IMG/VR virus record: IMGVR_UViG_3300027749_002876
Coordinates: 62,001 to 126,000 of that record
Strand: one strand, 5' to 3'
DNA: 64,000 nucleotides
Positions 1,733-57,582 of the stretch are shown one piece after another; position 1 is the stretch's first letter, and each line of letters opens with the position of its first letter. The notes below the pieces were generated by a model, which saw only the letters and a list, made by a program, of their open reading frames with translations, had not been told where the DNA came from and ran no database searches. The translations under genes were made by a program, and so were the position numbers.

Positions 1733-1944
1733 GTGGAAGAAAAGTATTAGTGCAAGACGGCAACACAGAAAAAGCATTACGGAAATTCAAAAAGAAGATT
1801 ACTGATTCTGGGTTACTGCAGGAAGTTAGGGATAGACAAGAATTTGTCAAGCCCACTATCCGTCGTAAACTTGCAAAAAGTCAGGCAAAAAGACGCTGGC
1901 AGAAATACTTGCGTGACCAAAGTCTTCCTAAGAAAGAATTTTAA
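1729..1944 (+). CDS. rpsU: 30S ribosomal protein bS21
   Basis: EKALRKFKKK...GLLQEVRDRQEFVKPT signature, basic 71 aa. Confidence 0.9.
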   Translation: MSGRKVLVQDGNTEKALRKFKKKITDSGLLQEVRDRQEFVKPTIRRKLAKSQAKRRWQKYLRDQSLPKKEF

Positions 1945-6659: not shown

Positions 6660-9563
6660 ATGGATGAATTAGATCCGCGTAAATTATACGAACTTTCGGA
6701 ATCTCTCAACGAACTTACCGGTACAGTAAAATATACCGGCACAGCCATGCAGTCCATGTTGGGACCTCAGGCTGAAGCAAACAAGAAATTAAAAAACTCA
6801 GGTAAAAAACGTGCCAAGGTTGAAGAACAGGCGGCTGAACAACAAGCAAAGCAGTTAACCAAACAGGAAGAATCTCAAGCAAAACAGAAAAAAATGCTTG
6901 ATGATGAGTTACGATATCGCGGCTACGCAATAGATGCAACAGGTAACTTAACTAAAACAACCACATCACTAAGTGGTGCTCAAAAGCAAGCACTAGAATC
7001 ATTGGATAAGCGTATTGCCAAAGAGCGTGAACTTGCTGAAGTAATTAAAGATCCAGTCAAATCATTTAGAAGCATATCAAGCAGTATAAACAGCCTCGAC
7101 GGTGTTATGGGCCAGATGCAGGAGAAGATGTTTGAGATGACTGGTAAGAGCGTGCCAATGGCAGCAGGTCTTATCGCAGCCACAGCAGTTGTCGGTGGAG
7201 TAGTTAAAGCCGCAACCGGAATGGCTGACTCACTATATAAAGGTGAACGTGGTGCTAAAGTTGGTGCTAAAGCAGTTAAAGATTTAAATGATTCAGTAAC
7301 TAAAGCCGCATATGGTATCAGTGCGGCACTGATGTTTATGCCCGGATTGGGAATTGTTGCTAAAGTATTAGGAGCCGCAATTGGGCTGTTTTCTTTGGCA
7401 ATGGAGGGTTCCACAAAACTAATAGAAATGGGTGCAGAGTATAACGATAAGGTATACGATTCATTCAATAAATTAAGCGAGACGGGGTTAATAACAGCTA
7501 AGGGCATGAGTGGTGTTAGTAACACCATGGAAAAGCTAGGAGTAACAAGTGCTGAAATAGAGAAGATGAATTCTCTATTAGCAAGCAACTCAAAAGACTT
7601 AGCATTATTTGGTGGGACTGCGGCAGGTGGATTAGAAAAATTCACAGAAGTTGCCGGAACTATTTCACATCCAGCAAGTGAATTAAACAAAAAATTAATG
7701 TTGCTTGGTATATCAAGTGACGAACAAAGAGAACATACATTAAAGTACATGGCTTTGCAAACACGCATGGGCATGACGCAAGGCAAGACACAAGCTGACC
7801 TAGTTAAAGGTTCTGTTGCCTACATGGAAGAACTAGATAGAATTGCTTCTATCACTGGAATAGGTCGTAAAGAACAAGAAGAAGCACAGAAGCAGGTAAT
7901 GGCTATTGAAGAATTACGTGCGGCAATGTTCCAAGCTGAACGTAGTAGTGATACTAAACGACAAAAAGAATTAGAAACAGCATTTAAATACTCTAGCCGA
8001 TTGATGGCTGAGGGTAGAAAGAAAGAAGCGGCCGGTGTTGCTAAGTATTATGCCGCAGGTAAAAATGTTGTTGACAGTGATTCGGCAATGGCAGCACAGA
8101 ATAGTGCAGGTGCTATTAAAGCTATTGGTGAAGGTAAAGAAGGCGAAGATGTTTATCAAGAAGGCATCAAGAGTGCTAAAGAATCTGCTATACGTACAGC
8201 AGGCACTAAGCGAATTGGCGGTGATGTGTCTAATCAAATTGGAGACTTCAATGCTACACTAGATGCTATTAAACGTAGTGAGAAGTCGCAAGAGGAAATG
8301 AAGAAACTGGGTCTAAGTCCAGAAGCATATGCTAAAAAACTTCAAAAAGAAAAAGAAGAAAAGCCTGATCCAAATTTAGCAAAGAATGTTGATGCTATGC
8401 AGATACAGCAGAAGGCTGGTTTGACAATGGATCAAGCGGCAAAGGCAATGGATGGTGCAGGTCTTGCAATGGCATCATCAGTTAAGGCATTTAATGAGGC
8501 AGTGAAATTATTTAATCAAGCTTCTGGTACTGGCCCAGCACAAGGAGCCGCAGTAGAGAAAGCTAAACAAGCAGATACAGCGGCATTGAATAAACAACAA
8601 GCCGCAATGGATGCTAATAAGAAAACGCAAAATGATCCAACTGCAACAAAAGCACAAAAAGAATCTGCACAAAAATCAGAGGATGATGCTAATAAAGAGT
8701 CAATGAAGGCAATGGCGGCTAAGAGAGAAGCCTTCCTAAAAGAACAAAATGAATTACGTGAACTAAACAAAAAACAACGTGGTTCCGGCAAAGAAGTATT
8801 CAAGACCATGGAAGATGCACGAAAGGCTGGAGCCGCACCAAAAGCTGAAACAGCTCCGACGGCGGCTGCACCAAAAGCTGAAACAGCTCCGACGCAGGCT
8901 GCTAAGCCGGCATCATCACCTACGCCATCACCCGGTGCACCTTCAGAAGGTCACAGTGAAGGGGGTACAGAAAAATCAGCACCACCGGCTGCGCCAACAT
9001 CGGCTCCACCAGTTTCATTAAAATCAAGCTCAACCAAAACTGATTTATTAATAGCAAATGAACCAGTCACTGCTGATAAGCCATTAAGTAAAACACAAAT
9101 GTCAATAATTGAGCTTGGTATTAGTCAAGGAAATAAATTCTCTGACATGGTAATGCAAAAGTTCAATTCTCAAATGTTTGGTGCCAAACCAGTAGCTCCA
9201 AATTCTAAACCTGTGGGTGATGTTGAAATTCCAATTGACAAGGCTGCGACCGGGGGAGTATTTGACGGGCCGGGTAAGAATTCAGTAATGCTAAACAATA
9301 GCACTATGGCTGCAAATGATATATTAGCTTCACTCAGAGAATCATTTGGTAGTGTTCAAAAGAAATCAGTTGAGAGTGAATTACCAAAATTAACTAAATT
9401 TAATACAATGACTTCTTCAAGTAGAGGTATTTCAACAAATAGTTCAATGGACATACTAGAAAAATTTACTGACATTATGGAACAGAAACTATCCGACGTT
9501 ATAGATGCTATATCGGATAACAATAACATTAAAGAAGAAATCTTACTTTACAGTAAAGCATAA
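6660..9563 (+). CDS. Long alpha-helical virion protein (tape-measure/baseplate-hub-like)
   Basis: 967 aa, Ala/Lys/Glu-rich coiled coil, hydrophobic Gly/Ala segment, Pro-rich linker, late promoter upstream. Confidence 0.5.
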   Translation: MDELDPRKLYELSESLNELTGTVKYTGTAMQSMLGPQAEANKKLKNSGKKRAKVEEQAAEQQAKQLTKQEESQAKQKKMLDDELRYRGYAIDATGNLTKTTTSLSGAQKQALESLDKRIAKERELAEVIKDPVKSFRSISSSINSLDGVMGQMQEKMFEMTGKSVPMAAGLIAATAVVGGVVKAATGMADSLYKGERGAKVGAKAVKDLNDSVTKAAYGISAALMFMPGLGIVAKVLGAAIGLFSLAMEGSTKLIEMGAEYNDKVYDSFNKLSETGLITAKGMSGVSNTMEKLGVTSAEIEKMNSLLASNSKDLALFGGTAAGGLEKFTEVAGTISHPASELNKKLMLLGISSDEQREHTLKYMALQTRMGMTQGKTQADLVKGSVAYMEELDRIASITGIGRKEQEEAQKQVMAIEELRAAMFQAERSSDTKRQKELETAFKYSSRLMAEGRKKEAAGVAKYYAAGKNVVDSDSAMAAQNSAGAIKAIGEGKEGEDVYQEGIKSAKESAIRTAGTKRIGGDVSNQIGDFNATLDAIKRSEKSQEEMKKLGLSPEAYAKKLQKEKEEKPDPNLAKNVDAMQIQQKAGLTMDQAAKAMDGAGLAMASSVKAFNEAVKLFNQASGTGPAQGAAVEKAKQADTAALNKQQAAMDANKKTQNDPTATKAQKESAQKSEDDANKESMKAMAAKREAFLKEQNELRELNKKQRGSGKEVFKTMEDARKAGAAPKAETAPTAAAPKAETAPTQAAKPASSPTPSPGAPSEGHSEGGTEKSAPPAAPTSAPPVSLKSSSTKTDLLIANEPVTADKPLSKTQMSIIELGISQGNKFSDMVMQKFNSQMFGAKPVAPNSKPVGDVEIPIDKAATGGVFDGPGKNSVMLNNSTMAANDILASLRESFGSVQKKSVESELPKLTKFNTMTSSSRGISTNSSMDILEKFTDIMEQKLSDVIDAISDNNNIKEEILLYSKA

Positions 9564-19037: not shown

Positions 19038-19784
19038 TCAATAAGCTAATGCAATCATTTTAGCTTCAGGAATACGAGTTTTTGTATTCTTGCTACCCAA
19101 TAAGACCACTGTTCGTATACCGCGTTCAGTGGTCAACATCATTACAATACATCCACCACTCTTAGTAATCCATCCGGTCTTACTAACAATAAACTCATAA
19201 CCATGACCGACTAAAGTGTTGGTATTGTTAAAGAATGCAGTTTTCTTTTTATTGATTGCCATTTTCATAGAATCTTTATTACTATCTTCATTGATGGTTT
19301 GATACTTGCTTGCGGCAATAACAAGCTTAACTAAATCTTCTGCGGTACTTACATTGAATACACTTAATCCAGTAGGCTCAAGATATTTTGTGTCATTCAT
19401 TTCTAATGACTTAGCCTTCTCATTCATTGCCTGTATACAGGCAAATGAGCCCATTGGGTATTTTTGACAAAGTAATGTTGCGGCTTGATTGTCTGATTTG
19501 ATGATGGCAAGACTAATTAAGTCACGCCTAGATAGTTTTTTATTATAGAGTTTTGTAGAGATAATCTCATCTAAATCTTGCTGTGCATCTAACACAACCA
19601 TAACAGTCATAAGTTTAGTAATGCTTGCAACACTACGAATATCTTTGGTGTGATTGCCATCTAATATTTTGCCATTACCGTCAGCTACTAGCCAGGACTG
19701 TGCTGTTAATGGTACTACTTGTGCATGTGCTCCAAAATGCAAGAGGCACAACAATATAAAAATTCTAAGCATTCTTTTATCCAA
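19038..19784 (-). CDS. D-Ala-D-Ala endo/carboxypeptidase (peptidase S11, PbpG-like)
   Basis: Signal peptide; ASITK (SxxK), SDN (SxN), KTG. Confidence 0.92.
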   Translation of the reverse strand: MDKRMLRIFILLCLLHFGAHAQVVPLTAQSWLVADGNGKILDGNHTKDIRSVASITKLMTVMVVLDAQQDLDEIISTKLYNKKLSRRDLISLAIIKSDNQAATLLCQKYPMGSFACIQAMNEKAKSLEMNDTKYLEPTGLSVFNVSTAEDLVKLVIAASKYQTINEDSNKDSMKMAINKKKTAFFNNTNTLVGHGYEFIVSKTGWITKSGGCIVMMLTTERGIRTVVLLGSKNTKTRIPEAKMIALAY

Positions 19785-20179: not shown

Positions 20180-20950
20180 ATGAAAACATATCGTTCTATT
20201 TTTGTGAGTGATGTACATTTGGGTACCAAAGATAGTCAGGCTGATAAGTTAAATAATTTTTTAAAACACAATAGTTGTGACACACTGTATTTGGTAGGTG
20301 ATATTATAGATGCGTGGCGTATACAACAAAACAGGTGGCGATGGAAACAAAGCCATACCAATGTGGTTCGTAGAGTATTAGGTCATGCCAAACGTGGCAC
20401 TAGAGTTGTTTATATAGCAGGTAATCATGATGAGTTTCTTAGGCCAATGATTCCATATGGATTCAGTTTTGGTCTAGTAGAGATTCATAATCAAATAGAA
20501 CACATAGGTGCAGATGGCAAACATTATCTAGTAACCCACGGGGACTTGTTTGATGGTATCACAAGACTAGCACCGTGGATAGCATTTTTAGGAGACAAAG
20601 CATATGATATCATTTTATCGCTCAATAGTAGGTTCAATTGGATACGTCATCGTTTTGGTTTTGGGTACTTTAGTCTTAGTAAATATCTTAAATCAAAAGT
20701 AAAAAAAGCAGTAGATTTTATTTTTCATTTTGAAAAGAACCTAGCTGCCTATTGTAAAAAGCGAGGGTTTGATGGTGTAATATGTGGTCACATACACCAA
20801 GCAGAAATCAAATACATTGATGGGATTCGATATATGAACGACGGTGATTGGGTAGAATCCTGTACGGCACTAGTAGAACATCATGATGGCAAGTGGGAAA
20901 TAATTACATGGACTAAACAAAATGACAAAAACGATATTGATAATCACTGA
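20180..20950 (+). CDS. PlcP-like phospholipase C (LpxH/COG2908 metallophosphoesterase family)
   Basis: YRSIFVSDVHLG, YLVGDIID.W, GNHDEFLR, THGD.FD, ICGHIH, NDGDWVESCTALVE. Confidence 0.85.
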   Translation: MKTYRSIFVSDVHLGTKDSQADKLNNFLKHNSCDTLYLVGDIIDAWRIQQNRWRWKQSHTNVVRRVLGHAKRGTRVVYIAGNHDEFLRPMIPYGFSFGLVEIHNQIEHIGADGKHYLVTHGDLFDGITRLAPWIAFLGDKAYDIILSLNSRFNWIRHRFGFGYFSLSKYLKSKVKKAVDFIFHFEKNLAAYCKKRGFDGVICGHIHQAEIKYIDGIRYMNDGDWVESCTALVEHHDGKWEIITWTKQNDKNDIDNH

Positions 20951-21941
20951 TAACTTACCGGAGCAAATAAATGGCGTGGTCACGACCTACACGAATATTG
21001 AGACATGTGCGGTTTTGGATGGTTATAAGTTTGTGGTGTTGCATCCCGGGTGGTTCAGCTACATTGATTGTCCTAGCTACAACGAAGTCAAGATTGCCTA
21101 TCCAAGGAACTTGGGCCAGAAGGTTAAGGAGATCGATCCGGATTATATCCATATCGCCACAGAAGGTCCTCTTGGTCTGTGGGGTAGAAAGTATCTGTCA
21201 CTATGTAATATTAGGCACAATACCGCTTATCATACTAAATTTCCTGAGGGTTTAAAGAAACTATTTGGCATACCTGAAAGTCTCACTTGGGTATTTGTTC
21301 GTTGGTTTCATAAGCACAGCGGTAAAGTATTGACTACTACAGACTCAATGGTTCAAGAATTACGTAAGCATGGATTCACCGGTGAAGTTGTTTCTTGGAC
21401 TAGAGGTGTTGACAGAACAATATTTGATCCATCTCTTAGAGAAGAATTACCTAGCAAGTATTTGCTATGTGTTAGTCGTGTTAGCAAAGAAAAAAACCTA
21501 GAAGATTTTTTTAAATTAGATTATTTCGGGTATCAAAAGATCATGGTAGGTGATGGCCCCATGTTAGAGACCTACAAAAAGAAATACCCAGATGTACACT
21601 TTACTGGATTTAAAACAGGAGTAGATTTAGCTAGGTATTATGCTAATGCTGATGTGTTTGTGTTTCCTAGTCGTTGGGAAACATTTGGTTTAGTAATGAT
21701 TGAATCAATGGCGTGTGGTACCCCTGTCGCGGCTTATCCTTGTCAAGGCCCCGTAGATGTTATAGATGAAGGTGTTACTGGTTGTATGAACAATAATTTA
21801 AAACAGGCTGTGACTGATGCATTAGCGTTAAAAAGAGAAGTAGTACTGAGTGGGAGCAACAGATGGACTTGGCAAAAGGCATGGGAAATATTTAGAGATA
21901 ATCTAGTCCCTGTCACATCATTGTCACATAATATGCGTTAA
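20922..21941 (+). CDS. GT4 glycosyltransferase (Agt-like diacylglycerol glycosyltransferase)
   Basis: TD..P.Q.NGVV.T, HIATEGPLG, YHTKFPE, RVSKEKN, FPS..ETFGLV..ESMACGTPV. Confidence 0.85.
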   Translation: MTKTILIITDNLPEQINGVVTTYTNIETCAVLDGYKFVVLHPGWFSYIDCPSYNEVKIAYPRNLGQKVKEIDPDYIHIATEGPLGLWGRKYLSLCNIRHNTAYHTKFPEGLKKLFGIPESLTWVFVRWFHKHSGKVLTTTDSMVQELRKHGFTGEVVSWTRGVDRTIFDPSLREELPSKYLLCVSRVSKEKNLEDFFKLDYFGYQKIMVGDGPMLETYKKKYPDVHFTGFKTGVDLARYYANADVFVFPSRWETFGLVMIESMACGTPVAAYPCQGPVDVIDEGVTGCMNNNLKQAVTDALALKREVVLSGSNRWTWQKAWEIFRDNLVPVTSLSHNMR

Positions 21942-22685: not shown

Positions 22686-22752
22686 GGGCACAAGATAGAG
22701 TGCCGCTGGATTCTCGTAACCAGTACTAAGGGTTCGGTAGGGCTCTTTTTTA
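22686..22752 (+). ncRNA. Candidate structured RNA: two hairpins plus a terminator
   Basis: GGCAC/GTGCC, GCTGG/CCAGT, then AGGGTTC-GGTA-GGGCTCT and a T-tract. Confidence 0.5.
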
Positions 22753-22802: not shown

Positions 22803-23621
22803 ATGAAAAAACTACTACTATTATTATTTGTATTTATTAGTTCAGTTGTCAACGCACAATTACCAACTAGTAATGTACCGCTACCCGCTGATATTGCCGC
22901 AATTAAGAAAGCAAACGTTCTTATTGTAGCAATGACCAAAAAAGATAACCCTCCCTTCTTCAGTGGTAGCGAGGATGATATCCATGGTCTTGACGTTGAA
23001 ATTGCACGAAGAATTGGAGTAATGCTTGGAGTTCCTGTACAGTTTAGACGAGATGCAGAAAGTTTTGCAGAAGTTGTAGAACAAGTTCGAGACGGGCGTG
23101 CCGATGTTGCAGTTAGCAAATTATCTGTAACCGGCCCTAGATTGCAAGTAGTTAGATTCAGTGATCCTTACATCAAACTAAGACAAAGTTTAGTTATCAA
23201 TCGATTATGGCTAAGCCAAAATAGTCAAGGTCGTGAAGTATATCAAGTCATTAGAAATTTCAATGGTAAAATAAGTTTCATTCGCAACTCAAGCTATGAC
23301 ACATTTGCACGTACTAATTTCCCTAATGCCACGTTTCTTCCGGAAGATAAATGGGATGTGATTATTGACAAAGTTACACGTGGTGATATTGCAGCCGCTT
23401 ATCGTGATGAATTTGAGATTAAGAAAATTGCTTTTGAAAAACCAGAAGCCGCAATCAGTACAAAGAGTATCACAATCAGTGACAGCGTGGATAACATTGC
23501 TGTTGCGGTAAATCCTAAATCATTACAATTGTTAAGTATTATTAATTATGTTATTAAAAATGAATACAACAATATTGACACTAAGAAGTTGATGGACCGC
23601 TACAAAGCTGAAAAGAAATAA
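22803..23621 (+). CDS. Amino-acid ABC-type periplasmic binding protein (SBP family 3)
   Basis: Signal peptide; PPF, GLDVEIA..I...LGV, D.A.S.LS.T..R...V.FS.PY. Confidence 0.9.
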   Translation: MKKLLLLLFVFISSVVNAQLPTSNVPLPADIAAIKKANVLIVAMTKKDNPPFFSGSEDDIHGLDVEIARRIGVMLGVPVQFRRDAESFAEVVEQVRDGRADVAVSKLSVTGPRLQVVRFSDPYIKLRQSLVINRLWLSQNSQGREVYQVIRNFNGKISFIRNSSYDTFARTNFPNATFLPEDKWDVIIDKVTRGDIAAAYRDEFEIKKIAFEKPEAAISTKSITISDSVDNIAVAVNPKSLQLLSIINYVIKNEYNNIDTKKLMDRYKAEKK

Positions 23622-23630
23622 GGATATAAA

Positions 23631-24905
23631 ATGAAATTTAATTTAAAAAACTTCTTATCTAGTCCGTGGACTATTTTAGGATCAATTATACTTGGAGTAC
23701 TGGCAGGAATATATGCTCCTGCACAAAGTATGAACTTTGAAAGTGTTGGAGGAATTTACATTAGCTTGCTTAAAGTTGTGGTAATACCTTTCTTACTTGC
23801 AACTATTTTGGTTGGTGTTATCAGCCTACTACAAAAAGAAGGCAGTGCCGCAATGATACGCAAAATTATCATTGGCTTTGTTGGCAGTATGTTCTTGGCC
23901 GCAGTTATTGGTGTTGGTACTGTTGCACTGACCGGCAGCGAAATGACTCCTGCAAAACAAGCACAACTTGGTGCTATTGTCAACGATAAAGAATCTGGTA
24001 GTGATCTTAACATAACACTAAAAGAACCAATGCCTGCCGCACCGCACGTTGACCCAATGCAAATGGCACAGAAGTTTATTCCAGAAAATATTTTTAATAC
24101 ACTAGCCGCTGGCGAGAGTTTAAAGATTGTTATCTTTTGTTTAATCTTTGGTATTGCATTAGGTAACTTAAAAACTACTGGTCAAGAAATGCTAGTGGAT
24201 ATATTAAAGAGCGTACAACAGGCCAGTATCAGTATTTTTAAATTCTTAAACTACTTTCTACCGTTTGCACTATTGGCAATGATTAGCAGCCAAGTTGGTA
24301 AGGTTGGAGTTGGTATTTTCTTGACCATGGTTGAGTTTATCATGCAACAGGCCATTGGTGGATTGCTTGTTGTTATTGCTGGTACTATTGTTATTTGGCA
24401 ACGTTCAGGACTAAGCTTAATGACTGTTATTAAAGAAACTAAGGAAACATTAATTGTGGCTGTTAGTTCACGCAGTAGTTTAGCATGTATTCCTTATGCA
24501 CAAGAAGCACTGCACAAATTACATTTTGATAGAACTGGTGTAGAATTAACCGTGCCATTAAGTTTTACAGTTAACCGTATTGGTAGTATTGTTTATTACG
24601 CAATTGCCACAGTATTTATTGCCAACATCTACGGTGCACCTATGGGAGTAACTGGTTTGCTGGTTGTATTGTTTGGTAGTATTTTAGCTGGATTAGCAAG
24701 TGCTGGTACAACAGGTATCTTAACAGTTGCTACAGTAGCAGTCGTTTGTGATTTATTAAAACTACCAAGTGAAGCGGTATTAGTATTATTAATTGCAGTT
24801 GATCCGTTAATGGACATGATTCGCACAGCAAGTCATGTACACGGCAATGTGGCAGTAACAGCATTTGTCTGCGACAAAGAGATAACAGATAATGGACAAA
24901 CTTAA
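23631..24905 (+). CDS. Dicarboxylate/amino-acid:cation symporter (GltP/SDF family)
   Basis: LLK..VIP, IPENIF, SSRSS, PL..TVN, AVDPLMDM.RT..HV.GN. Confidence 0.92.
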   Translation: MKFNLKNFLSSPWTILGSIILGVLAGIYAPAQSMNFESVGGIYISLLKVVVIPFLLATILVGVISLLQKEGSAAMIRKIIIGFVGSMFLAAVIGVGTVALTGSEMTPAKQAQLGAIVNDKESGSDLNITLKEPMPAAPHVDPMQMAQKFIPENIFNTLAAGESLKIVIFCLIFGIALGNLKTTGQEMLVDILKSVQQASISIFKFLNYFLPFALLAMISSQVGKVGVGIFLTMVEFIMQQAIGGLLVVIAGTIVIWQRSGLSLMTVIKETKETLIVAVSSRSSLACIPYAQEALHKLHFDRTGVELTVPLSFTVNRIGSIVYYAIATVFIANIYGAPMGVTGLLVVLFGSILAGLASAGTTGILTVATVAVVCDLLKLPSEAVLVLLIAVDPLMDMIRTASHVHGNVAVTAFVCDKEITDNGQT

Positions 24906-25506
24906 AGATTTTCTTTTAAGTTTATTAACCTATATAGGCGAGAGTCCATTTCGTTTATTCACAGTTGTATTCCTTTGCATAATTGGATTTGGCGGCTGGA
25001 TTGTCTATTCAGAAAAAGATGCCTTTATGGCCAGCTATCGTGCCCAACAAGCACTGCCTCGAATGAATGGTGAGTATGAAAAAGCCACTAACTTTATACT
25101 TAAAAACAGCCAAGCAGAATTAATAGCCATATTTGAAGTCAATACTTTATTAAACACTAGAAAATTGGTATACTTTGCCACACGCAAAGGCGGACAAGAA
25201 AAGGGGATGTATGGCACTGATGTTGGCTTGTTGACCAAAAACTACGACAACAATAACGATGTGATTTCCATGATGTCAGGCAAGATACCTTGCCAAACTT
25301 ACGAGAAACCTCAAAGTATGATGGGATTCATTTATGTTGAAAAAGGCGTCAAGTGGATGTGTCGTATCAGCGTTCCAGCAGAACCTGGCATATTTATTGG
25401 ACAAATATCAGTAGGTTGGACTGAGGTACCTATAGATAAAATGCCCGTCGATACACAACAAACTGTAATGATTGTGGCTAGCGGCTTACTGTATAACAAG
25501 AAATGA
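24892..25506 (+). CDS. Putative T4-t/T5-type holin (one TM plus periplasmic GAF-like domain)
   Basis: Single TM near residues 22-39; C-terminal C...P....IGQISVGW resembles T5 holin C.P....AGYIGIAW. Confidence 0.5.
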   Translation: MDKLKDFLLSLLTYIGESPFRLFTVVFLCIIGFGGWIVYSEKDAFMASYRAQQALPRMNGEYEKATNFILKNSQAELIAIFEVNTLLNTRKLVYFATRKGGQEKGMYGTDVGLLTKNYDNNNDVISMMSGKIPCQTYEKPQSMMGFIYVEKGVKWMCRISVPAEPGIFIGQISVGWTEVPIDKMPVDTQQTVMIVASGLLYNKK

Positions 25507-25564
25507 GACTTCCCTCTGTCATGGCTGGTTTCATTTTTTTAATTATTTTAATAATTATATTTTT

Positions 25565-26290
25565 ATGAAAAAATTAGGTGTATTGGGCGGAATGGGTCCT
25601 GCAGCCAGTGCTGAATTTATAGTTAGACTAATTCAACAAACACCTGCTAGCAAAGACCAAGATCATATTCCGTTTGTTCTTTGGAACAATCCACAAATCC
25701 CCGACCGTAGCACCAGCATGAGAAACGGTGATGACAAACCATTACCTTACTTGATAGAAGGTATACAGGCATTAAAATATTCAGGTTGCGATTTAATTGT
25801 TATACCTTGCAATACAGCACACTTTTGGTATCATGAATTAAGTAGATTGAATGTGAAAATTATTCACATTGTGGATAGTGTTGCTGACGCATTAAGTGAA
25901 ATAGATGTTACTAATACTACTATAGGGGTAATGGGTACACAAGCTACAGTTGAGTTTGGATTATATCAATACATGTTGAACAAGTCAGGATGGAATTGTA
26001 TCACCCCTACAAAAGAGGAAATGGATACATTAGTACAACCAGCTATTGATTTAATTAAAAGTGGCAATATTTCACAAGCACAACTCATGTTAATGACAGT
26101 AATAAACAGTTTGATTGATAGAGGTGCCAAAGCAGTGGTATTGGGTTGTACAGAAATACCATTGGCAATAAAGCAGACTGAAGAAAATGGTATACCTATC
26201 ATCAATAGTATTGATAGTTTGGTTAAGATAGCAATCAGGAATTTTAACCCAATGTATTTGAATAGTCATGTCGATTGTGATATAATCTAG
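25565..26290 (+). CDS. Aspartate/glutamate racemase
   Basis: LGVLGGMGP.AS, PDR, PCNTAH, LGCTEIP (two catalytic Cys). Confidence 0.93.
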   Translation: MKKLGVLGGMGPAASAEFIVRLIQQTPASKDQDHIPFVLWNNPQIPDRSTSMRNGDDKPLPYLIEGIQALKYSGCDLIVIPCNTAHFWYHELSRLNVKIIHIVDSVADALSEIDVTNTTIGVMGTQATVEFGLYQYMLNKSGWNCITPTKEEMDTLVQPAIDLIKSGNISQAQLMLMTVINSLIDRGAKAVVLGCTEIPLAIKQTEENGIPIINSIDSLVKIAIRNFNPMYLNSHVDCDII

Positions 26291-34053: not shown

Positions 34054-34899
34054 ATGGCATTGAAACAAGATCCACGAACAATAATAGATACAAGTCAGGA
34101 TCATACCTTCAACCCACCTGTCACCAAAAAAGTAATATCTAGGACACTTGACGACAAATTTAATTTAGTGTGGAAGGCTGATAAACTAGATACTAGAGAT
34201 TACAGATATCAATTAACACAAAAAATTAATCCTGATATAGTTGACCTAAGAAGTTATTGTAGTCCAATTGAAAATCAAGGTAATCTAGGTAGCTGTACCG
34301 GACAATCTATTGCCGGTGCAATAGAACTACTAAACAAACGCAATGGTAAACCAACTGATGTTAGTAGATTGTTTATATACTATTATGAACGAGTATTGCT
34401 AGGAACAGTTAACTATGATAGTGGTGCATACATTCGTGATGGCATTAAAGCAACTAATAAGTATGGGGTAAGTTTAGAATCATACTGGCCATATGATATT
34501 AGAAAATTTAAACAAGAACCAATCAATGAAGCAAAGAGTGACGCATTAAATCGTAAGGTAACACGATACGAAAGAGTGGAAGACTTTAATGGATGTATTG
34601 ACGCATTAAGTAATGGTTATTCAGTTATCATAGGCTTCAGTGTGTATGATAGCTTTATGTCAATGAATGTTGCCAAGACCGGTATGATGCCTTATCCAAA
34701 CACAAAGCGTGAAAAACTATTAGGTGGACATGCAGTGTTACTTGTTGGATACGACAAAAACAAAAAAGTATTCATTGCAAGAAACAGTTGGGGAACAGGT
34801 TGGGGCGACAGAGGTTACTTCTATATGCCGTTTCAAGTTATTCAGAATACAAATATGAGTAGCGACTTCTGGATTATAAAGTCAGTTTCAAACCCATAA
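34054..34899 (+). CDS. Papain-like C1 cysteine peptidase
   Basis: NQG.LGSCT, GGHAVLLVGY, RNSWG..WG..GYF. Confidence 0.92.
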   Translation: MALKQDPRTIIDTSQDHTFNPPVTKKVISRTLDDKFNLVWKADKLDTRDYRYQLTQKINPDIVDLRSYCSPIENQGNLGSCTGQSIAGAIELLNKRNGKPTDVSRLFIYYYERVLLGTVNYDSGAYIRDGIKATNKYGVSLESYWPYDIRKFKQEPINEAKSDALNRKVTRYERVEDFNGCIDALSNGYSVIIGFSVYDSFMSMNVAKTGMMPYPNTKREKLLGGHAVLLVGYDKNKKVFIARNSWGTGWGDRGYFYMPFQVIQNTNMSSDFWIIKSVSNP

Positions 34900-53292: not shown

Positions 53293-53368
53293 TGGCATCC
53301 CGGGTAAGCCTCGAACTTACAACCCCTGGTTTTGGAGACCAGTGCTCTGCCAATTGAGCTACCGAGAT
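53293..53368 (-). tRNA. tRNA-Trp(CCA)
   Basis: Cloverleaf, encoded CCA end. Confidence 0.93.
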
Positions 53369-53375
53369 ATATTCT

Positions 53376-53597
53376 TTATGCGTTTTTTCTAATACGCTTG
53401 AGGTATTCTCTACCCACAAGTCCTGCTTCAATTTCTTGAAGTGCAGTCACAATAGGACCTGCTTTAGAGACTAGTGTAGAACGATGTCCACGCTTTAACT
53501 CTCTTACTCTATGTGAAGCGATAAGAACTAAATCAAATCGATTACCAACCATATTAACGGCGTCTTCACTTGTATATCTTGCTCTGCTTTCAGTCAT
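53376..53597 (-). CDS. rpoZ: RNA polymerase omega subunit
   Basis: AR.T.EDA...VGNRFDLVLIAS.R.REL...TAL.EI..G. Confidence 0.9.
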   Translation of the reverse strand: MTESRARYTSEDAVNMVGNRFDLVLIASHRVRELKRGHRSTLVSKAGPIVTALQEIEAGLVGREYLKRIRKNA

Positions 53598-53608
53598 TTT
53601 CTTCCTTT

Positions 53609-54208
53609 TTAAAATTCAAACATTAATCTTTTCATTGTCTCAAAATAAATTTTAGGTCTTAATGCTAATGCAGGCCTTAATGTTAATACAACTCTTTCAT
53701 TATCTGATTGTGAATTATCCCAATCGTGAAATATTTCGGTATTAAACAATATTGCTTCATTGGGCTGAGCCACCATTGATTTAACCGGGGAGTGTTTAGT
53801 TTTATCAAATCCAACACATTCCCTTGATCCATTATGTTTAGGATCGATTTCATACATAGATAAATCTTCATCACTATACCAGCTGGTCACACACTTATCA
53901 TCTAATATTTTAGAAGTATAATTTATACTAACATGGTCAAATGATCCGTCTTTATGAGCCCTATATGTCATATGCGGCTTTGATATGAATAACGATACCC
54001 GATCAATTTCTAATGGTGGAAATTTTAAGGGAATCATACTCAGCATTTTTTTAGATTCATCTGGCTGTAATTTATAATGAGTAAAATCTTCATTTATCTT
54101 ATAAATATCCGGGGTGATTACATTGCAATAATCTATTATAGACTGTATACCGGCGTGAGTATATCTAATATAATAAGGACTACAATCTTCAATGATTTCG
54201 TATTTCAT
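53609..54208 (-). CDS. Fe(II)/2OG oxygenase- or cupin-like protein
   Basis: AHKD...LFNT...H...N...R..L..R. Confidence 0.6.
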   Translation of the reverse strand: MKYEIIEDCSPYYIRYTHAGIQSIIDYCNVITPDIYKINEDFTHYKLQPDESKKMLSMIPLKFPPLEIDRVSLFISKPHMTYRAHKDGSFDHVSINYTSKILDDKCVTSWYSDEDLSMYEIDPKHNGSRECVGFDKTKHSPVKSMVAQPNEAILFNTEIFHDWDNSQSDNERVVLTLRPALALRPKIYFETMKRLMFEF

Positions 54209-54210
54209 GC

Positions 54211-54864
54211 TTACTCTAAAAATAATAGGTTGTTATTTTTAAATACATCTCTCCAGTATCCTGTGTTAGGTATCAGAGCCCATAATTTAGTATTTTCAAA
54301 AACTATCAATGTTCTATTTTTTTTTGTTTGATTTAATGCGACCGCAACCCCATTAAACCAGGGATGAAAATCATCTCCTAGTAATAATCCGGTATCGGAT
54401 TCATACTTTTCAATATCATGTTTAACATCCAATAATGTATGTGAAGCATCAATAAAGGTAAGATCGTAATGTTTTACTTTCTCAAAATCTTTGCTAGAAG
54501 TAGGGTGTACATTTATATTAGCATACATTTCTTCACCTATACAAAATCTAAATGCATCATGCCATCCTGTAGCTTTTGCAATTTCTCTTGCATCAGCATA
54601 CATAATAGGATCGCCTAGTGCAAATTGCAAATTTTCAAACTCAATATTTAATAATGATTGGCTAGAAACAATTCTAAAATTATCAACTATATCCATGCTT
54701 ACAGAAGAATTTTTACCTCTATAGAGGGCAGTAGTAGAACTACCCAAAAAACAACCTATTTCTAAAATAGAACCATTATCAGGAACATAACCAGCCAATG
54801 TTGAAAGAATTATTAATTCTTTTTCGAGCATCCAACCCGGAATGTTTACATTGTATTTTTGCAT
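54211..54864 (-). CDS. Class I SAM methyltransferase
   Basis: PGWM, LEIGC..GSST, FIDASH, GDD. Confidence 0.85.
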   Translation of the reverse strand: MQKYNVNIPGWMLEKELIILSTLAGYVPDNGSILEIGCFLGSSTTALYRGKNSSVSMDIVDNFRIVSSQSLLNIEFENLQFALGDPIMYADAREIAKATGWHDAFRFCIGEEMYANINVHPTSSKDFEKVKHYDLTFIDASHTLLDVKHDIEKYESDTGLLLGDDFHPWFNGVAVALNQTKKNRTLIVFENTKLWALIPNTGYWRDVFKNNNLLFLE

Positions 54865-54884
54865 ATTGTATTTATGTTTATATT

Positions 54885-54960
54885 TGGAGCGGGAAATCGG
54901 GTTCGAACCGACGACATTCACGTTGGCAACGTGATGCTCTACCAACTGAGCTATTCCCGC
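54885..54960 (-). tRNA. tRNA-Gly(GCC)
   Basis: Cloverleaf. Confidence 0.95.
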
Positions 54961-54967
54961 ATATTCT

Positions 54968-55042
54968 TGGTACATCGACACGGTTTCGAACCGCGGACCC
55001 TCTCCGTGTAAAGGAGACGCTCTACCCCTGAGCTATCGATGC
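54968..55042 (-). tRNA. tRNA-Val(TAC)
   Basis: Cloverleaf. Confidence 0.95.
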
Positions 55043-55052
55043 ATATTTTTAT

Positions 55053-55232
55053 TTAACCCCCTTGAGAGCTGTCTTTAACTTCTGTTTCTCTAGCAATTTT
55101 TTCAAACGCTTCATCTTCATTCTTTTGATCCTCAATCATTCTTGGATCAGGCTTACGAAAGATTTTGTCATAGTTGTTTGCATATTCTTGTTGACTGACA
55201 CTGTATGGTCTTGGACTAGAACCTTTGCTCAC
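55053..55232 (-). CDS. Small protein, 59 aa (MSKGSSPRPYSVSQQEY...DKIF), GTG start, not in the ORF track
   Basis: GTGA overlap with the upstream ORF. Confidence 0.6.
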   Translation of the reverse strand: MSKGSSPRPYSVSQQEYANNYDKIFRKPDPRMIEDQKNEDEAFEKIARETEVKDSSQGG

Positions 55233-55399
55233 TTCTTGTCCCCTTTACCCCCACTGTATGATCGCAAACCTTCTTGTGCAATCTTAGCATAGCTACGCAA
55301 AAATGAACCACGTACATGTGGATCAAGAATTTGAGCGGCTGCAATCTTTACTAGCTTACCGATTTTAACGGCTTTTGGGTCATAACCTCTGCATGTCAT
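55229..55399 (-). CDS. Small hypothetical protein
   Basis: AGGA SD before MTCRGYD. Confidence 0.6.
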   Translation of the reverse strand: MTCRGYDPKAVKIGKLVKIAAAQILDPHVRGSFLRSYAKIAQEGLRSYSGGKGDKK

Positions 55400-55422
55400 A
55401 CTATCTTCCTTTGTTAAAAACT

Positions 55423-55499
55423 TGGTCGGAATAGTAGGATTCGAACCTACGACCTCTTGCTCCCAAAGCAAGCGCACTACCAGGCTGTGCTACACTCCG
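55423..55499 (-). tRNA. tRNA-Pro(TGG)
   Basis: Cloverleaf. Confidence 0.95.
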
Positions 55500-55503
55500 T
55501 AAT

Positions 55504-55577
55504 TGGATGCGGGTGACAGATTCGAACTGCCGATGCACCTGGCTTATGAGACCGGTGTGGTGACCACCCAACCCGCG
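55504..55577 (-). tRNA. Atypical initiator-like tRNA(CAT)
   Basis: CGCGGG 5' end, C1:A72 mismatch, truncated D-arm. Confidence 0.7.
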
Positions 55578-55581
55578 TATT

Positions 55582-56268
55582 TCACAATTCTGCATAATTA
55601 GTAATACTTGGTGGTTTAGCAAACGCATCCACATACATAATCTTACTGTTATCTTTTATTGTTAATTTATTAATGTAATTATACACTACTTCAAAAGTTT
55701 GTTTGTATATTTCGGGATTATCGTATGTAAAATGCGGAGCTATAGCTGTTGCTATTGCACCTTTGTCATTGTGTTCGGCAAATGCCCTCATCATGTGAGC
55801 TTGCATTGCTTTGCTTCCTGCATACCCCGCATAACTTGTCCATTCATTACGATTGAACTTTACTGCCATATATGATATAATAAAAATAATTTTACTATTT
55901 TCATTCATTCGTTTTAATGCTTCTACACCCAAAACATGAGGTATATGGCATGCAAGTCTTATATTCTCTTCCCATCTTTTTAAGTCAACTACACTAGTAG
56001 AAGTAAAGCAATTTTCATCATTTGGATAAGAACCTGAATTGGAATTAAAAAGAATCATATCAACAGTATCAACATCTTTGGTCACTTCATTAAATGCTTC
56101 TACTACACATTGAACACTATCAAAGTTTGCTTTGATATCATGTGGATGTCCTGTATTGTAATTCTTGTGAGATACAATATAAACGTTATGACCATCAGTA
56201 CGCATACGCAATACTAGGTCATTACCAAACTTACCGGGTTCACCTCCCCCTATTATCACTATGTTCAT
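55582..56268 (-). CDS. Short-chain dehydrogenase/reductase-like protein
   Basis: IGG...G.FG, YAGSK (YxxxK). Confidence 0.75.
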   Translation of the reverse strand: MNIVIIGGGEPGKFGNDLVLRMRTDGHNVYIVSHKNYNTGHPHDIKANFDSVQCVVEAFNEVTKDVDTVDMILFNSNSGSYPNDENCFTSTSVVDLKRWEENIRLACHIPHVLGVEALKRMNENSKIIFIISYMAVKFNRNEWTSYAGYAGSKAMQAHMMRAFAEHNDKGAIATAIAPHFTYDNPEIYKQTFEVVYNYINKLTIKDNSKIMYVDAFAKPPSITNYAEL

Positions 56269-56288
56269 ATTATGAGTCCTCAAGTATT

Positions 56289-56364
56289 TGGTGGAGGATA
56301 CCAGGATCGAACTGGTCACCTACTGCTTGCAAAGCAGCCGCTCTCCCAAATGAGCTAATCCCCC
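56289..56364 (-). tRNA. tRNA-Ala(TGC)
   Basis: Cloverleaf with G3:U70. Confidence 0.95.
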
Positions 56365-56438
56365 ATGTAGAAACACACTTGATATAGTAGCAAAAGCTAT
56401 CACGGATGAACCCGAGTTTAGTCAAATATGTTTTTATA
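56365..56438 (-). ncRNA. Candidate small RNA with a long closing stem
   Basis: AUAUAAAAACAUAUUUGA/UCAAGUGUGUUUCUACAU. Confidence 0.5.
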
Positions 56439-56515
56439 TGGTGCCCCAGAGGAGACTCGAACTCCTAAAATTTGGCTTCTAAGACCAACACGTATACCAA
56501 TTCCGTCACCAGGGC
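56439..56515 (-). tRNA. tRNA-Leu(TAG) with short variable region
   Basis: Leu-type D-arm, 77 nt. Confidence 0.88.
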
Positions 56516-56516
56516 A

Positions 56517-56605
56517 GTTATAATATAACACACTACGAATCTCCTTCTAAGTTATGGACCTAGCGAGTACTCCAGTTGTGTTCATGTAATGTGTTATATT
56601 ATAAC
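56517..56605 (-). ncRNA. Candidate small RNA / 16-bp inverted repeat overlapping a promoter -10
   Basis: GTTATAATATAACACA/TGTGTTATATTATAAC; TTGACA-17-TATAAT at 56598-56626. Confidence 0.5.
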
Positions 56606-56690
56606 ATATATCTATTTATATGTCAACTATCTTTGGATAAGAAGAACTCAGACGTATGATAACCATTTACCGGTTAGTTATTACAGAGGT

Positions 56691-57227
56691 CTAAGCCGTG
56701 TTATATATTGCTAGATCACCATAGCGTTTTAAACTACACTCTATCAATTGTTTATGTTTTTCTACATCCAAGAAACCTTTAATATAAAGTGTTTCTCTCA
56801 TAAAATCTTCCTTTACTCTATGCAAACATGCGGTAAGATTAAGCAGGTATGCTATGGGCACTTGAGGCAATATAGGAGTTATCCATTCTTTGCCATTAAA
56901 TATTTCAAGCGAGTCGCATTTACCTTTTAATACTACATGATACCCAGCCGGTTCAGCTTGTGCAATGTGTTTATATTCATTAGATAAATTATCACCGGGA
57001 TAATAATCATGGTGAGGATTAACTACTATTTGTTGAAACTTATGCGTAAATGTTGTGATATCTATTATTGGTATTTGATCTAATAAACTTCTATATTGTT
57101 GATAGTTATTTTCTTTACCAAGAACTTCTTTTGTTTCCCAAAAATTTTGATGATAGGTATGTTGATCACCTAACTCAAAACTAGTTTCAGTAACGTCTAT
57201 ATCTAGTGGAACAAATAATAATTTCAT
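56691..57227 (-). CDS. Oxygenase/cupin-like hypothetical protein
   Basis: PHHD, EP.GY, H.V...R; TTAAATA-4-ATG. Confidence 0.6.
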   Translation of the reverse strand: MKLLFVPLDIDVTETSFELGDQHTYHQNFWETKEVLGKENNYQQYRSLLDQIPIIDITTFTHKFQQIVVNPHHDYYPGDNLSNEYKHIAQAEPAGYHVVLKGKCDSLEIFNGKEWITPILPQVPIAYLLNLTACLHRVKEDFMRETLYIKGFLDVEKHKQLIECSLKRYGDLAIYNTA

Positions 57228-57244
57228 CTAGTATTTAATAACAT

Positions 57245-57318
57245 TGGAGCGGGGTAACAGAATCGAACTGTCAGCATTAGCTTGGAAGGCTAAGGTATTA
57301 CCACTATACGAACCCCGC
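57245..57318 (-). tRNA. tRNA-Gly(TCC)
   Basis: Cloverleaf. Confidence 0.95.
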
Positions 57319-57330
57319 ATAAATATATTT

Positions 57331-57495
57331 ATGTACATATATGACGCTATCACAAAAACAGGACTTGTTATACACTTATCAATGAGTGCTGAACATACAT
57401 TTTACATTATGGTATTTGATATTGACAACTTCACATTGACCATGAAATTCTTCAACAACATCGAAACAGCACTTGCTTTTATACAAGCACTTTAG
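57331..57495 (+). CDS. Small protein antisense to the tRNA array
   Basis: CATAAATA just upstream of ATG. Confidence 0.5.
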   Translation: MYIYDAITKTGLVIHLSMSAEHTFYIMVFDIDNFTLTMKFFNNIETALAFIQAL

Positions 57496-57500
57496 TTAAC

Positions 57501-57578
57501 TGGAGCAACGGGTCAGATTTGAACTGACGGTTTTACGGATTTGCAATCCGTTGCATTGGGCCGCTCTGCCACCGTTGC
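57501..57578 (-). tRNA. tRNA-Cys(GCA)
   Basis: Cloverleaf, U73. Confidence 0.92.
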
Positions 57579-57582
57579 ATAT

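What the first reader, a model, noticed from the sequence alone, without database searches (positions are those of the whole stretch)
22803..26290. Amino-acid binding protein, Asp/Glu-type symporter, holin-like protein and racemase in one run
Seen: a family-3 binding protein with no ABC permease or ATPase next to a secondary SDF symporter. The symporter overlaps a single-TM protein resembling T4/T5 holins, followed by a two-Cys Asp/Glu racemase. The symporter has TVNRIG in place of the usual NMDG motif. Established: T4-type holins time lysis through a periplasmic GAF-like domain. Inference: either D/L-acidic amino-acid scavenging, or a circuit that makes, imports and senses a D-amino acid and couples it to lysis timing. 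The second would be a new kind of phage signalling.
Basis: partly seen in the sequence, partly recalled or inferred. Interest (0 to 1): 0.75.

Follow-up and report, generated by a model that had tools for sequence, protein, structure and literature searches.

The report
Holin-like gene inside phage transporter operon
A family of very large freshwater phages carries a tightly packed operon in which a distant relative of the phage T4 lysis-timing protein (holin T) sits between an unusual amino-acid transporter with its binding protein and a racemase. This pairing has not been described and could be either plain nutrient scavenging next to a lysis gene or a nutrient-sensing lysis switch.

Summary
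All four genes are at the stated coordinates. They are a secreted family-3 binding protein (22803-23621), an SDF transporter (23631-24905), a 204-aa single-TM protein X (24892-25506, overlapping SDF by 14 nt) and a two-Cys racemase (true start 25565, end 26290). In the SDF, NMDGT is replaced by NRIGS.

X has no Pfam hit, but it is a remote homologue of T4 holin T:
- The profile-profile match is 92.7% probable over the full length.
- In an AlphaFold model (pLDDT 95), the T4 T periplasmic domain gives the top three structural matches (Z 12.5-13).

In some relatives, X-family genes sit beside endolysins and a 3TM holin-like gene.

The racemase passes NCBI's cysteate-racemase (CuyB) model. Bacteria often have SDF directly followed by such a racemase, without X.

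Linkage is strong. X follows SDF in 73 of 73 informative phage loci. SDF precedes X in 44 of 48. The racemase is present in 58 of 68. X occurs alone three independent times.

The most likely reading is a T-type lysis protein embedded in an acidic-amino-acid or cysteate uptake and racemisation operon of bS21-type jumbo phages. A ligand-to-lysis link remains possible but has no positive evidence.

The 524-kb record itself looks like a join of two related phages.

The parts
22728..22747 (+). Terminator-like hairpin followed by a T-run, between the upstream 231-aa ORF and the binding-protein gene. It is a possible 5' boundary of the operon.
   Evidence: Consensus scan and sequence. This is weak evidence: the number of such sites is about what shuffles give.
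22803..23621 (+). Secreted family-3 (amino-acid type) solute-binding protein, 272 aa, with a signal peptide cleaved before Q.
   Evidence: Pfam SBP_bac_3 E 8e-18. The nearest solved relatives are amino-acid ABC binding proteins. It is 67-96% identical in 22 related loci, all with an ...A|Q signal end.
23631..24905 (+). SDF/DAACS-family secondary transporter, 424 aa, with NRIGS in place of NMDGT and DMIRTASHVHGN in TM8.
   Evidence: Pfam SDF E 5e-65. Alignment to aspartate transporter 9bgz. The motifs are conserved in 43 loci.
24892..25506 (+). X: a 204-aa type II membrane protein with a short N-terminus, one TM helix (about residues 19-40) and a GAF-like C-terminal domain. C134 is invariant and C157 nearly so. 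It is a remote homologue of T4 holin T.
   Evidence: hhalign of A1 against the T family gives 92.7%, E 4e-7, over 195 columns. The AF2 model has pLDDT 95.4. Foldseek and VIA-align place T4 T chains 6px4_B, 6psk_T and 6pxe_B at the top, Z 12.5-13.0. BFVD hits include annotated T-type and class III holins.
25565..26290 (+). PLP-independent two-Cys racemase of the aspartate-racemase family, CuyB-like, 241 aa.
   Evidence: NCBIfam CuyB scores 226.7 bits against a cut-off of 190, and TIGR00035 scores 171 bits. The nearest solved structures are aspartate racemases 3s7z and 1jfl. C82 and C195 are invariant.

Best explanation
The run is one conserved, translationally coupled operon of freshwater bS21-type jumbo phages (about 330-350 kb, hosts predicted to be Bacteroidota). 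It joins two things.

(a) An uptake-and-racemisation set for an acidic amino acid or its sulfonate analogue (aspartate, glutamate or cysteate). It comprises a secreted binding protein, an SDF-family carrier that keeps the substrate-binding Asp/Arg/Thr of TM8 but has lost the conserved cation-site Asp of NMDGT, and a cytoplasmic CuyB-like racemase.

(b) X, a distant member of the T4 holin-T (class III holin) superfamily. X is anchored N-in by one TM helix and has a GAF-like periplasmic domain.

Shown: gene identities, homology and fold of X, motif changes, and conservation of order and overlap.

Inferred:
- X acts in lysis, as a holin or holin-type regulator.
- The transporter set is an auxiliary metabolic module that feeds the infected cell. 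It has the same logic as bacterial SDF-CuyB operons and phage-borne binding proteins such as PstS.
- The two are kept together because they are co-transcribed, because SDF and X overlap, and because X cannot be lost.
For: X is T-like:
- hhalign 92.7% over the full length, with shared C..P...G.I...W positions.
- AF2 model with pLDDT 95.
- T4 T periplasmic domain gives the top three VIA-align matches and is among the top Foldseek hits.
- Annotated T-type and class III holins appear among BFVD hits.
- An atlas neighbour cluster carries PF11031.

Lysis context in relatives:
- L052 has a GH19 endolysin (phrog_181, E 1e-79), then X, then a GTA_holin_3TM-like gene.
- A GH19 endolysin lies within 7 kb of X in 12 loci.
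- Distant X homologues lie upstream of GH19 or lysozyme genes.
- Cronobacter phage S13 (Straboviridae) has an X homologue but no PF11031 match, while the T4 control scores 394 bits.

X is the indispensable member: lone X is nested three times among module X in the tree, and SDF is never found without X (0 of 73).

Transport set:
- Pfam and NCBIfam identities.
- All 26 racemase variants hit CuyB best.
- The Bilophila cuy cluster pairs an SDF transporter with CuyB (PMC11193023).
- 7 of 31 bacterial CuyB-like loci have SDF directly upstream with no X between.
- A porin gene lies close to the module in 7 loci.

Host and phage group: two bS21 genes are present, and the phages match the bS21 phage group described in PMC9723584.
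Against: - No direct test of lysis, and Pfam Phage_holin_T is not hit.
- The T4 T match stands only slightly above generic GAF domains (Z 13 against 11-12).
- In the window, no endolysin or other lysis gene lies near X. The record's GH19 and 3TM holin-like genes are far away, so another protein could be the real holin.
- The SBP-SDF-X trio is kept at deeper divergence than the racemase, and SDF and X overlap in every locus. This also fits a physical or regulatory link between X and the transporter.
- No CuyA-type lyase is in the record, so the fate of the racemised product is unknown.
- The altered cation site means the SDF may not be a normal symporter.
Confidence: 0.55

Rival explanations
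1. Ligand-controlled lysis timing. The binding protein and the cation-uncoupled SDF report the periplasmic level of an acidic amino acid to the T-type protein X, through its TM helix or its GAF-like domain. Lysis is then delayed or advanced according to nutrient or lysate signals. This would be the functional analogue of RI acting on T in T4 lysis inhibition.
For: - SBP-SDF-X is an invariant trio in 73 of 73 loci, down to 65% SDF identity, whereas the racemase is dispensable.
- SDF and X overlap everywhere.
- The module moves as a unit between genome positions.
- The SDF has lost cation-site residues yet is strongly conserved.
- In T4, T is controlled through this same periplasmic domain by a secreted protein (PDB 6psk; PMC11413866).
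Against: - There is no positive evidence of contact.
- The asymmetry (X alone occurs, SDF alone never) is equally explained by X being essential and overlapping SDF.
- The X periplasmic domain diverges quickly (64-69% nt identity between the two copies) while SBP and SDF stay at 90-97%. That is not what tight co-adaptation predicts.
- Lone X works without the other genes in three lineages.
Confidence: 0.2
2. X is not lytic here. It is an accessory subunit of a new binding-protein-dependent SDF transporter, a membrane-anchored periplasmic dock for the binding protein. This would be comparable in logic to the small subunits of TRAP and TTT transporters.
For: - A family-3 binding protein has no ABC partner anywhere in the record.
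- Translational coupling of SDF and X is invariant.
- Between the two copies, the TM end of X is co-conserved with SDF (83-85% nt).
- These phages carry another holin-type gene (3TM).
Against: - X-family proteins occur without any transporter in lysis cassettes and in unrelated phages.
- Lone X is nested within module X at short distances.
- Bacterial SDF-racemase operons need no such subunit.
- No SDF family member is known to use a binding protein (own knowledge).
Confidence: 0.15
3. The racemase makes a D-amino acid, the uncoupled SDF moves it across the membrane, the binding protein and X sense it outside, and lysis timing follows the density of infected cells, as a phage-phage signal.
For: All four functions are encoded in one operon. 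The SDF lacks the coupling Asp, so facilitated efflux is conceivable.
Against: - The racemase is the least conserved member, is absent in 10 of 68 loci, and is separated from X by insertions in others.
- Racemase with an importer is the known bacterial catabolic layout.
- There is no evidence for export or sensing.
Confidence: 0.05

Closest known systems
Phage T4 holin T (gene t; Pfam PF11031 Phage_holin_T; periplasmic domain in PDB 6PSK/6PX4/6PXE with antiholin RI)
   Same: About 200-220 aa, a short N-terminus, one TM helix and a GAF-like C-terminal domain of about 150 aa. The profile-profile match covers the whole length, and T4 T gives the best structural matches. As in T4, the gene need not sit next to the endolysin.
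   Different: Identity is only 12-13% and there is no Pfam hit. The conserved Cys pair is at different positions (C134/C157 against T4 C175/C207). No RI-like partner was identified. The gene is embedded in, and overlaps, a transporter operon.
Bacterial cysteate (cuy) cluster of Bilophila wadsworthia: SDF transporter + CuyB racemase + CuyA lyase + RidA (PMC11193023)
   Same: An SDF carrier is paired with a PF01177 racemase that passes the CuyB model. SDF directly upstream of the racemase recurs in sampled Pseudomonadota.
   Different: The phage version adds a binding protein, has X between SDF and the racemase, lacks CuyA, and its SDF has NRIGS where the two bacterial neighbour carriers whose motif was recovered have NLDGS.
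Phage-borne periplasmic binding proteins used as auxiliary metabolic genes (cyanophage PstS; own knowledge)
   Same: A secreted binding protein is encoded without its own ABC permease or ATPase, presumably to raise nutrient capture during infection.
   Different: Here it is amino-acid type and is always paired with a phage-encoded secondary carrier and a holin-like gene.
Binding-protein-dependent secondary transporters (TRAP DctPQM, TTT TctABC; own knowledge)
   Same: A binding protein, an elevator-type secondary carrier and a small extra membrane protein lie in one operon.
   Different: The carrier family is different (SDF), the third component is holin-T-like with a large periplasmic domain, and no functional evidence exists.

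Membership tests
T4-type (class III) holin, Pfam PF11031 Phage_holin_T | Match to the family HMM above the gathering score | tested here: not met
   No hit for P0001 even at E 10. No hit in a six-frame search of the whole record. None of the 50 family members hit it. The T4 positive control scored 394 bits.
T4-type (class III) holin, Pfam PF11031 Phage_holin_T | Remote homology by profile-profile comparison over the full length | tested here: met
   hhalign of A1 (50 sequences) against A2 (25 T-family sequences): probability 92.7%, E 4.3e-7, 195 aligned columns.
T4-type (class III) holin, Pfam PF11031 Phage_holin_T | Architecture: N-in, a single TM helix, a large periplasmic C-terminal domain | tested here: met
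   The AF2 model shows helix 19-40 followed by a globular alpha/beta domain at 57-204. The Lys/Arg-rich N-terminal extensions in homologues and the conserved Cys pair argue for N-in/C-out. Topology is inferred.
T4-type (class III) holin, Pfam PF11031 Phage_holin_T | Periplasmic domain with the fold of T (PDB 6PSK) | tested here: met
   VIA-align Z 12.5-13.0, 133-135 residues, rmsd 3.2-3.3, top three of 1000 chains. Generic GAF domains follow at Z 11-12.4. Foldseek TM 0.66-0.70.
T4-type (class III) holin, Pfam PF11031 Phage_holin_T | Genetic association with lysis genes | tested here: inconclusive
   Met in relatives: L052 has endolysin, X and a 3TM holin-like gene in a row; L063 and MW202825 have X upstream of GH19 or lysozyme genes; GH19 lies within 7 kb of X in 12 loci. 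Not met in the window, where the record's GH19 and 3TM holin-like genes are far away.
T4-type (class III) holin, Pfam PF11031 Phage_holin_T | Forms lethal membrane holes that release endolysin; controlled by an antiholin | not testable with these tools
   Needs expression and complementation assays.
SDF / DAACS transporters (Pfam PF00375) | Match to the family HMM | tested here: met
   220 bits, E 5e-65, covering 13-413. The nearest solved structures are aspartate and glutamate transporters.
SDF / DAACS transporters (Pfam PF00375) | NMDG(T) motif of TM7 with the cation-site Asp | tested here: not met
   NRIGS is aligned to NMDGT, and in TM8 the sequence TTVNVTGD is replaced by TASHVHGN. This is conserved in 43 loci. 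The two bacterial neighbour SDFs in which the motif was recovered have NLDGS.
SDF / DAACS transporters (Pfam PF00375) | TM8 Asp-x-x-Arg-Thr that binds an amino acid with an acidic side chain | tested here: met
   DMIRT is aligned to DMART of the aspartate transporter. The assignment of residue roles is from own knowledge of GltPh.
Cysteate racemase CuyB (NCBIfam NF052483) / aspartate-racemase family | Score above the curated equivalog cut-off | tested here: met
   226.7 bits against a cut-off of 190. CuyB is the best-scoring family in all 26 variants.
Cysteate racemase CuyB (NCBIfam NF052483) / aspartate-racemase family | Two catalytic cysteines | tested here: met
   C82 (IPCNTAH) and C195 (GCTE) are invariant in A4. 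The protein aligns end to end with aspartate racemases 1jfl and 3s7z.
Cysteate racemase CuyB (NCBIfam NF052483) / aspartate-racemase family | Partner D-cysteate sulfo-lyase CuyA (PALP family) in the same genome | tested here: not met
   No PF00291 match in the record. A host enzyme could serve.
Cysteate racemase CuyB (NCBIfam NF052483) / aspartate-racemase family | Racemase activity on cysteate rather than Asp or Glu | not testable with these tools
   Needs an enzyme assay.
Family-3 solute-binding protein of an ABC importer | SBP_bac_3 domain and a secretion signal | tested here: met
   Pfam E 8e-18. A signal peptide is present in all 23 aligned members.
Family-3 solute-binding protein of an ABC importer | Cognate ABC permease and ATPase | tested here: not met
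   No BPD_transp_1 match in the whole record and none among the neighbours. Host components cannot be excluded.

The most novel reading that the evidence does not exclude
The binding protein and the cation-uncoupled SDF are not, or not only, a feeding device. They are the input of a lysis switch. Occupancy by an acidic amino acid or sulfonate in the periplasm would be passed to the T-type holin homologue encoded in overlap with the carrier, so that these jumbo phages set their lysis time by a small-molecule cue. This would be a metabolite-sensing counterpart of T4 lysis inhibition.
Probability: 0.2. Interest if true: 0.85.

Novelty: new variant of a known kind. Interest (0 to 1): 0.6.

Why it matters
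Holin T is the textbook case of a phage timing its lysis through a periplasmic sensor domain, but it is known only from T-even-like and T5-like phages, and its only known input is a protein, RI.

This work finds a divergent branch of that superfamily that Pfam does not see. It is common in uncultured freshwater jumbo phages (about 600 metagenomic proteins). In more than 70 contigs it is fused into an operon with a binding protein and an atypical SDF carrier.

If the link is only co-expression, the locus is a clear new example of a phage-borne uptake route: binding protein, carrier, racemase and sometimes a porin. It also gives a useful annotation for a large orphan family.

If the link is functional, it would be the first metabolite-gated holin system. 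It would give a handle on how environmental phages decide when to lyse. The SDF variant without the conserved cation-site Asp is also of interest for transporter mechanism.

Tried and rejected
- Direct family searches of X gave nothing useful: Pfam, NCBIfam, PDB by sequence, and Pfam on all 50 family members. PHROGs gave only an unnamed family.
- Megablast of the region against phage records gave no match.
The single protein was used instead.
- Complex prediction of the mature binding protein with the X periplasmic domain scored 0.00, with the verdict 'no answer'. This is not evidence either way.
- I suspected that the multi-copy proteins of about 310 aa near module copy 2 were TctC-type binding proteins. 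Pfam gave no hit.
- Phage_lysozyme and SLT were not found in the record. CuyA/PALP was not found.
- A search of bacterial genomes for the SDF found only a 2,980-bp contig binned with an alphaproteobacterial MAG from Lac Pavin at 94% identity, most likely a mis-binned phage fragment.
- Metatranscriptome contigs lie on SBP, SDF and the racemase at 90-99% identity. They are short, and DNA carry-over cannot be excluded, so they do not show co-transcription.
- Literature searches for this gene combination, or for a GAF description of T4 holin, found nothing.
- The idea that the record is a 524-kb megaphage was rejected.
- The sigma-70 promoter scan was uninformative: 25 sites against 18 expected.
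Full report
**What is there.** Between 22803 and 26290 the + strand carries four close-packed genes.

- P0003 (22803-23621) is a family-3 solute-binding protein (Pfam SBP_bac_3, E 8e-18). It has a signal peptide ending VVNA|Q.
- P0002 (23631-24905) is an SDF-family carrier (220 bits).
- P0001, here called X (24892-25506), starts 14 nt before the SDF stop.
- The racemase ORF opens at a TTG at 25472. Homologues all begin MK(K/R)LG(V/I)LGGMGP, which puts the start at the ATG at 25565.
- A terminator-like hairpin (22728-22747) precedes the first gene.
- The next gene, an NT5C-type nucleotidase, starts 3 nt after the racemase stop.

**The carrier.** I aligned it to solved aspartate transporters.
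- The TM7 motif NMDGT reads NRIGS.
- TM8 reads DMIRTASHVHGN against DMARTTVNVTGD.
- From my own knowledge of GltPh, the Asp, Arg and Thr that hold an acidic amino acid are kept. The Asp of NMDG and the Asn of TM8, which help bind the coupling cation, are replaced, and an Arg sits beside the lost Asp.
- These motifs are the same in 43 related loci, and the protein is the most conserved of the four (mean pairwise distance 0.14). This is a working protein with a changed coupling site, not a decaying gene.
- That it is cation-independent is inference.

**The racemase.**
- It passes NCBI's equivalog model for cysteate racemase CuyB (226.7 bits, cut-off 190) and the aspartate-racemase subfamily model. 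All 26 variants tested hit CuyB best.
- Both catalytic-type cysteines are invariant.
- The nearest solved structures are aspartate racemases.
- In Bilophila wadsworthia, CuyB sits with an SDF transporter, the lyase CuyA and RidA. The published pathway is import by the SDF, racemisation, then cleavage (PMC11193023).
- In a sample of 401 Pseudomonadota genomes, 25 have a CuyB-like gene above the cut-off. In 7 of 31 loci an SDF gene lies directly upstream on the same strand, with nothing between.
- The two of those carriers whose TM7 motif was recovered have NLDGS, so NRIGS was not seen in them.
- The phage record has no CuyA-type enzyme and no ABC permease.

**Protein X.**
- X has no Pfam, NCBIfam or PDB sequence match.
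- It has about 600 metagenomic relatives. Representative-level relatives go down to 20% identity.
- The family shares an N-terminal TM helix, an invariant Cys134, a nearly invariant Cys157 and Gly170, and a S-x-P-P...G-x-I...G-W stretch.
- A profile of 50 members matches a profile of 25 T4 holin-T family members at 92.7% probability (E 4e-7) over 195 columns, from the N-terminus to the C-terminal helix.
- The AlphaFold model is very confident (pLDDT 95.4). It shows a TM helix, a linker helix and a GAF-like domain.
- Foldseek places the T4 T periplasmic domain (6psk_T, 6px4_B) among its best PDB hits.
- VIA-align ranks three T4 T chains first (Z 12.5-13.0, 133-135 residues), just above ordinary GAF domains (Z 11-12.4).
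- In the viral structure library, the hits after close relatives include proteins annotated as holin, class III holin or T holin of Proteus and Serratia phages. They also include single-TM GAF proteins of Tenacibaculum, Polaribacter and jumbo enterobacterial phages.
- The language-model atlas gives a neighbour cluster in which 12% of members carry PF11031.
- X is therefore a remote member of the holin-T superfamily. It is not a member of the Pfam family as defined.

**Is X a lysis protein?** The evidence is contextual only.
- In relative L052 the order is a GH19 endolysin (phrog_181, E 1e-79), X, then a GTA_holin_3TM-like protein.
- The same endolysin cluster lies within 7 kb of X in 12 of the related loci, and the 3TM protein in 4. 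These loci are not independent.
- More distant X homologues lie upstream of a GH19 gene (L063), upstream of a lysozyme (MW202825), behind a weak LysC-like gene, or at the end of a tail-fibre block.
- Cronobacter phage S13, a T4 relative, has an X homologue but no PF11031 match, while the same search finds T in T4 at 394 bits.
- Against this, the window has no lysis gene near X. The record's GH19 and 3TM holin-like genes lie elsewhere, so X need not be the hole-former.

**Linkage.**
- Loci were first fetched with X as the query. 44 of 48 informative loci have SBP-SDF-X in this order and 4 have X alone. The flanks differ widely.
- Loci were then fetched with the SDF. All 73 informative loci have X right behind it, and SBP is seen upstream wherever that flank is available. 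The racemase is present in 58 of 68 and missing mainly in the more distant relatives.
- In three loci other genes are inserted between X and the racemase. In two loci a second, 22-31% identical X paralogue follows the racemase.
- In a tree of X rooted with more distant homologues, the three lone-X types are each sister to a module X. Support is 100/99, 100/99 and 88/89.
- X has therefore been kept at least three times when the other genes were lost or left behind. The reverse was never seen.
- This fits an indispensable X and a dispensable transport set. Because SDF and X overlap, the same pattern cannot tell whether the transport set needs X.

**Two copies and a chimeric record.**
- The window lies at 62001-126000 of a 524,565-bp virus record. 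That record holds a second module at 282732-279391.
- Between the copies, the binding protein and carrier are 96.6% and 97.9% identical, but X only 72% and the racemase 68%.
- DNA identity is 90-97% across SBP and SDF. It drops inside X, just after the TM part, to 64-69%. Recombination therefore cuts within the module.
- The second copy sits in a different neighbourhood, three genes from a porin gene.
- About half of all ORFs in the record have a partner. The stretch 15-170 kb is collinear in reverse with 514-362 kb at 50-98% identity. A 100% identical direct repeat lies 347.5 kb apart.
- There are two bS21 genes.
- The simplest reading is a complete genome of about 347.5 kb joined to 174 kb of a related phage. 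Relatives measure 331-353 kb.
- These are the freshwater bS21 jumbo phages predicted to infect Bacteroidetes (PMC9723584). The runs that hold the sequence are lake and freshwater metagenomes.

**How it most likely works.**
- The binding protein, carrier and racemase form an uptake route for aspartate, glutamate or cysteate-like compounds. It copies a bacterial SDF-racemase layout and adds a high-affinity periplasmic receptor.
- X is a T-type lysis protein that is transcribed and translated with them.
- I put this at 0.55.
- The main rival (0.2) is that SBP and SDF are an input to X, a metabolite version of RI acting on T (PMC11413866).
- A second rival (0.15) is that X has been recruited as a transporter subunit.
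- A complex prediction of the binding protein with the X domain gave no answer and is not counted.

**Novelty.** Each part belongs to a known kind. New here are three things: a Pfam-invisible branch of the holin-T superfamily that is abundant in lake jumbo phages, its invariant fusion into a binding-protein/SDF operon, and an SDF lineage without the NMDG Asp. Full-text searches found no description of the combination.

Noticed in passing
Whole record G000 (window = G000:62001-126000); repeat at G000 174.4-175.6 kb and 522.0-523.2 kb: The 524,565-bp 'complete' virus record looks like a join of two related phages. 15-170 kb mirrors 514-362 kb at 50-98% protein identity, and a 100% identical direct repeat lies 347.5 kb apart. 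There are also two bS21 genes and two copies of the module. The likely make-up is one genome of about 347.5 kb plus 174 kb of a second phage; the window lies in the latter.
   Followed up: partly
G000 282732-279391 (- strand); locus L059:10386-13760: A second SBP-SDF-X-racemase module. SBP and SDF are 97-98% identical to the window's, but X is 72% and the racemase 68%. The identity break lies inside X, just after its TM helix.
   Followed up: yes
L059:6364-7248 (-), and related loci L016, L026-L029, L034: A phage-encoded Gram-negative porin (Pfam Porin_4, E 5e-21) lies three genes downstream of the module in seven loci. Together with the module it would span outer membrane, periplasm, inner membrane and cytoplasm.
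   Followed up: partly
L040:4100-4852 and L042 about 8521-9069: A second, strongly diverged X paralogue (250 aa, 22-31% identity) lies directly behind the racemase, 1-2 kb from a GH19 endolysin on the other strand. It is a possible holin/antiholin-type pair.
   Followed up: no
G000, about 16 places (e.g. 218159, 269735-272600, 276400-278300, 357815-361700, 451969-454100, 512154, 518181): A family of about 16 paralogues of a protein of about 310 aa, 60-73% identical to each other, without any Pfam hit. Several flank module copy 2.
   Followed up: partly
window 53293-63157 (- strand): A block of 27 tRNA genes with small ORFs between them.
   Followed up: no
window 1744-1896 (+): A ribosomal protein bS21 gene (58 bits). 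It ties the phage to the freshwater bS21 jumbo phages predicted to infect Bacteroidetes.
   Followed up: partly
window 19038-19784 (-), 20180-20950 (+), 20922-21941 (+), 34054-34899 (+): Envelope-related and other accessory genes lie near the module: a Peptidase_S11 D-Ala-D-Ala carboxypeptidase, an LpxH-like metallophosphoesterase, a GT4 glycosyltransferase and a papain-family protease.
   Followed up: no
G000 191957-192190 (-) and 514605-515081 (-): The record's GTA_holin_3TM-like gene and GH19 endolysin-like gene are far from each other and from both X copies. The lysis genes are scattered.
   Followed up: partly
L057 (JAPLOJ010000301.1, 2,980 bp, Lac Pavin alphaproteobacterial MAG): The only hit for the SDF in the bacterial genome collection is a short contig 94% identical to the phage gene. 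It is probably a phage fragment binned into a MAG.
   Followed up: no
window 22874-22946, 23781-24434, 25857-26056: Short contigs of a freshwater RNA-Seq run lie on the binding protein, carrier and racemase genes, one with a single mismatch. This hints at expression in nature but is not proof.
   Followed up: partly
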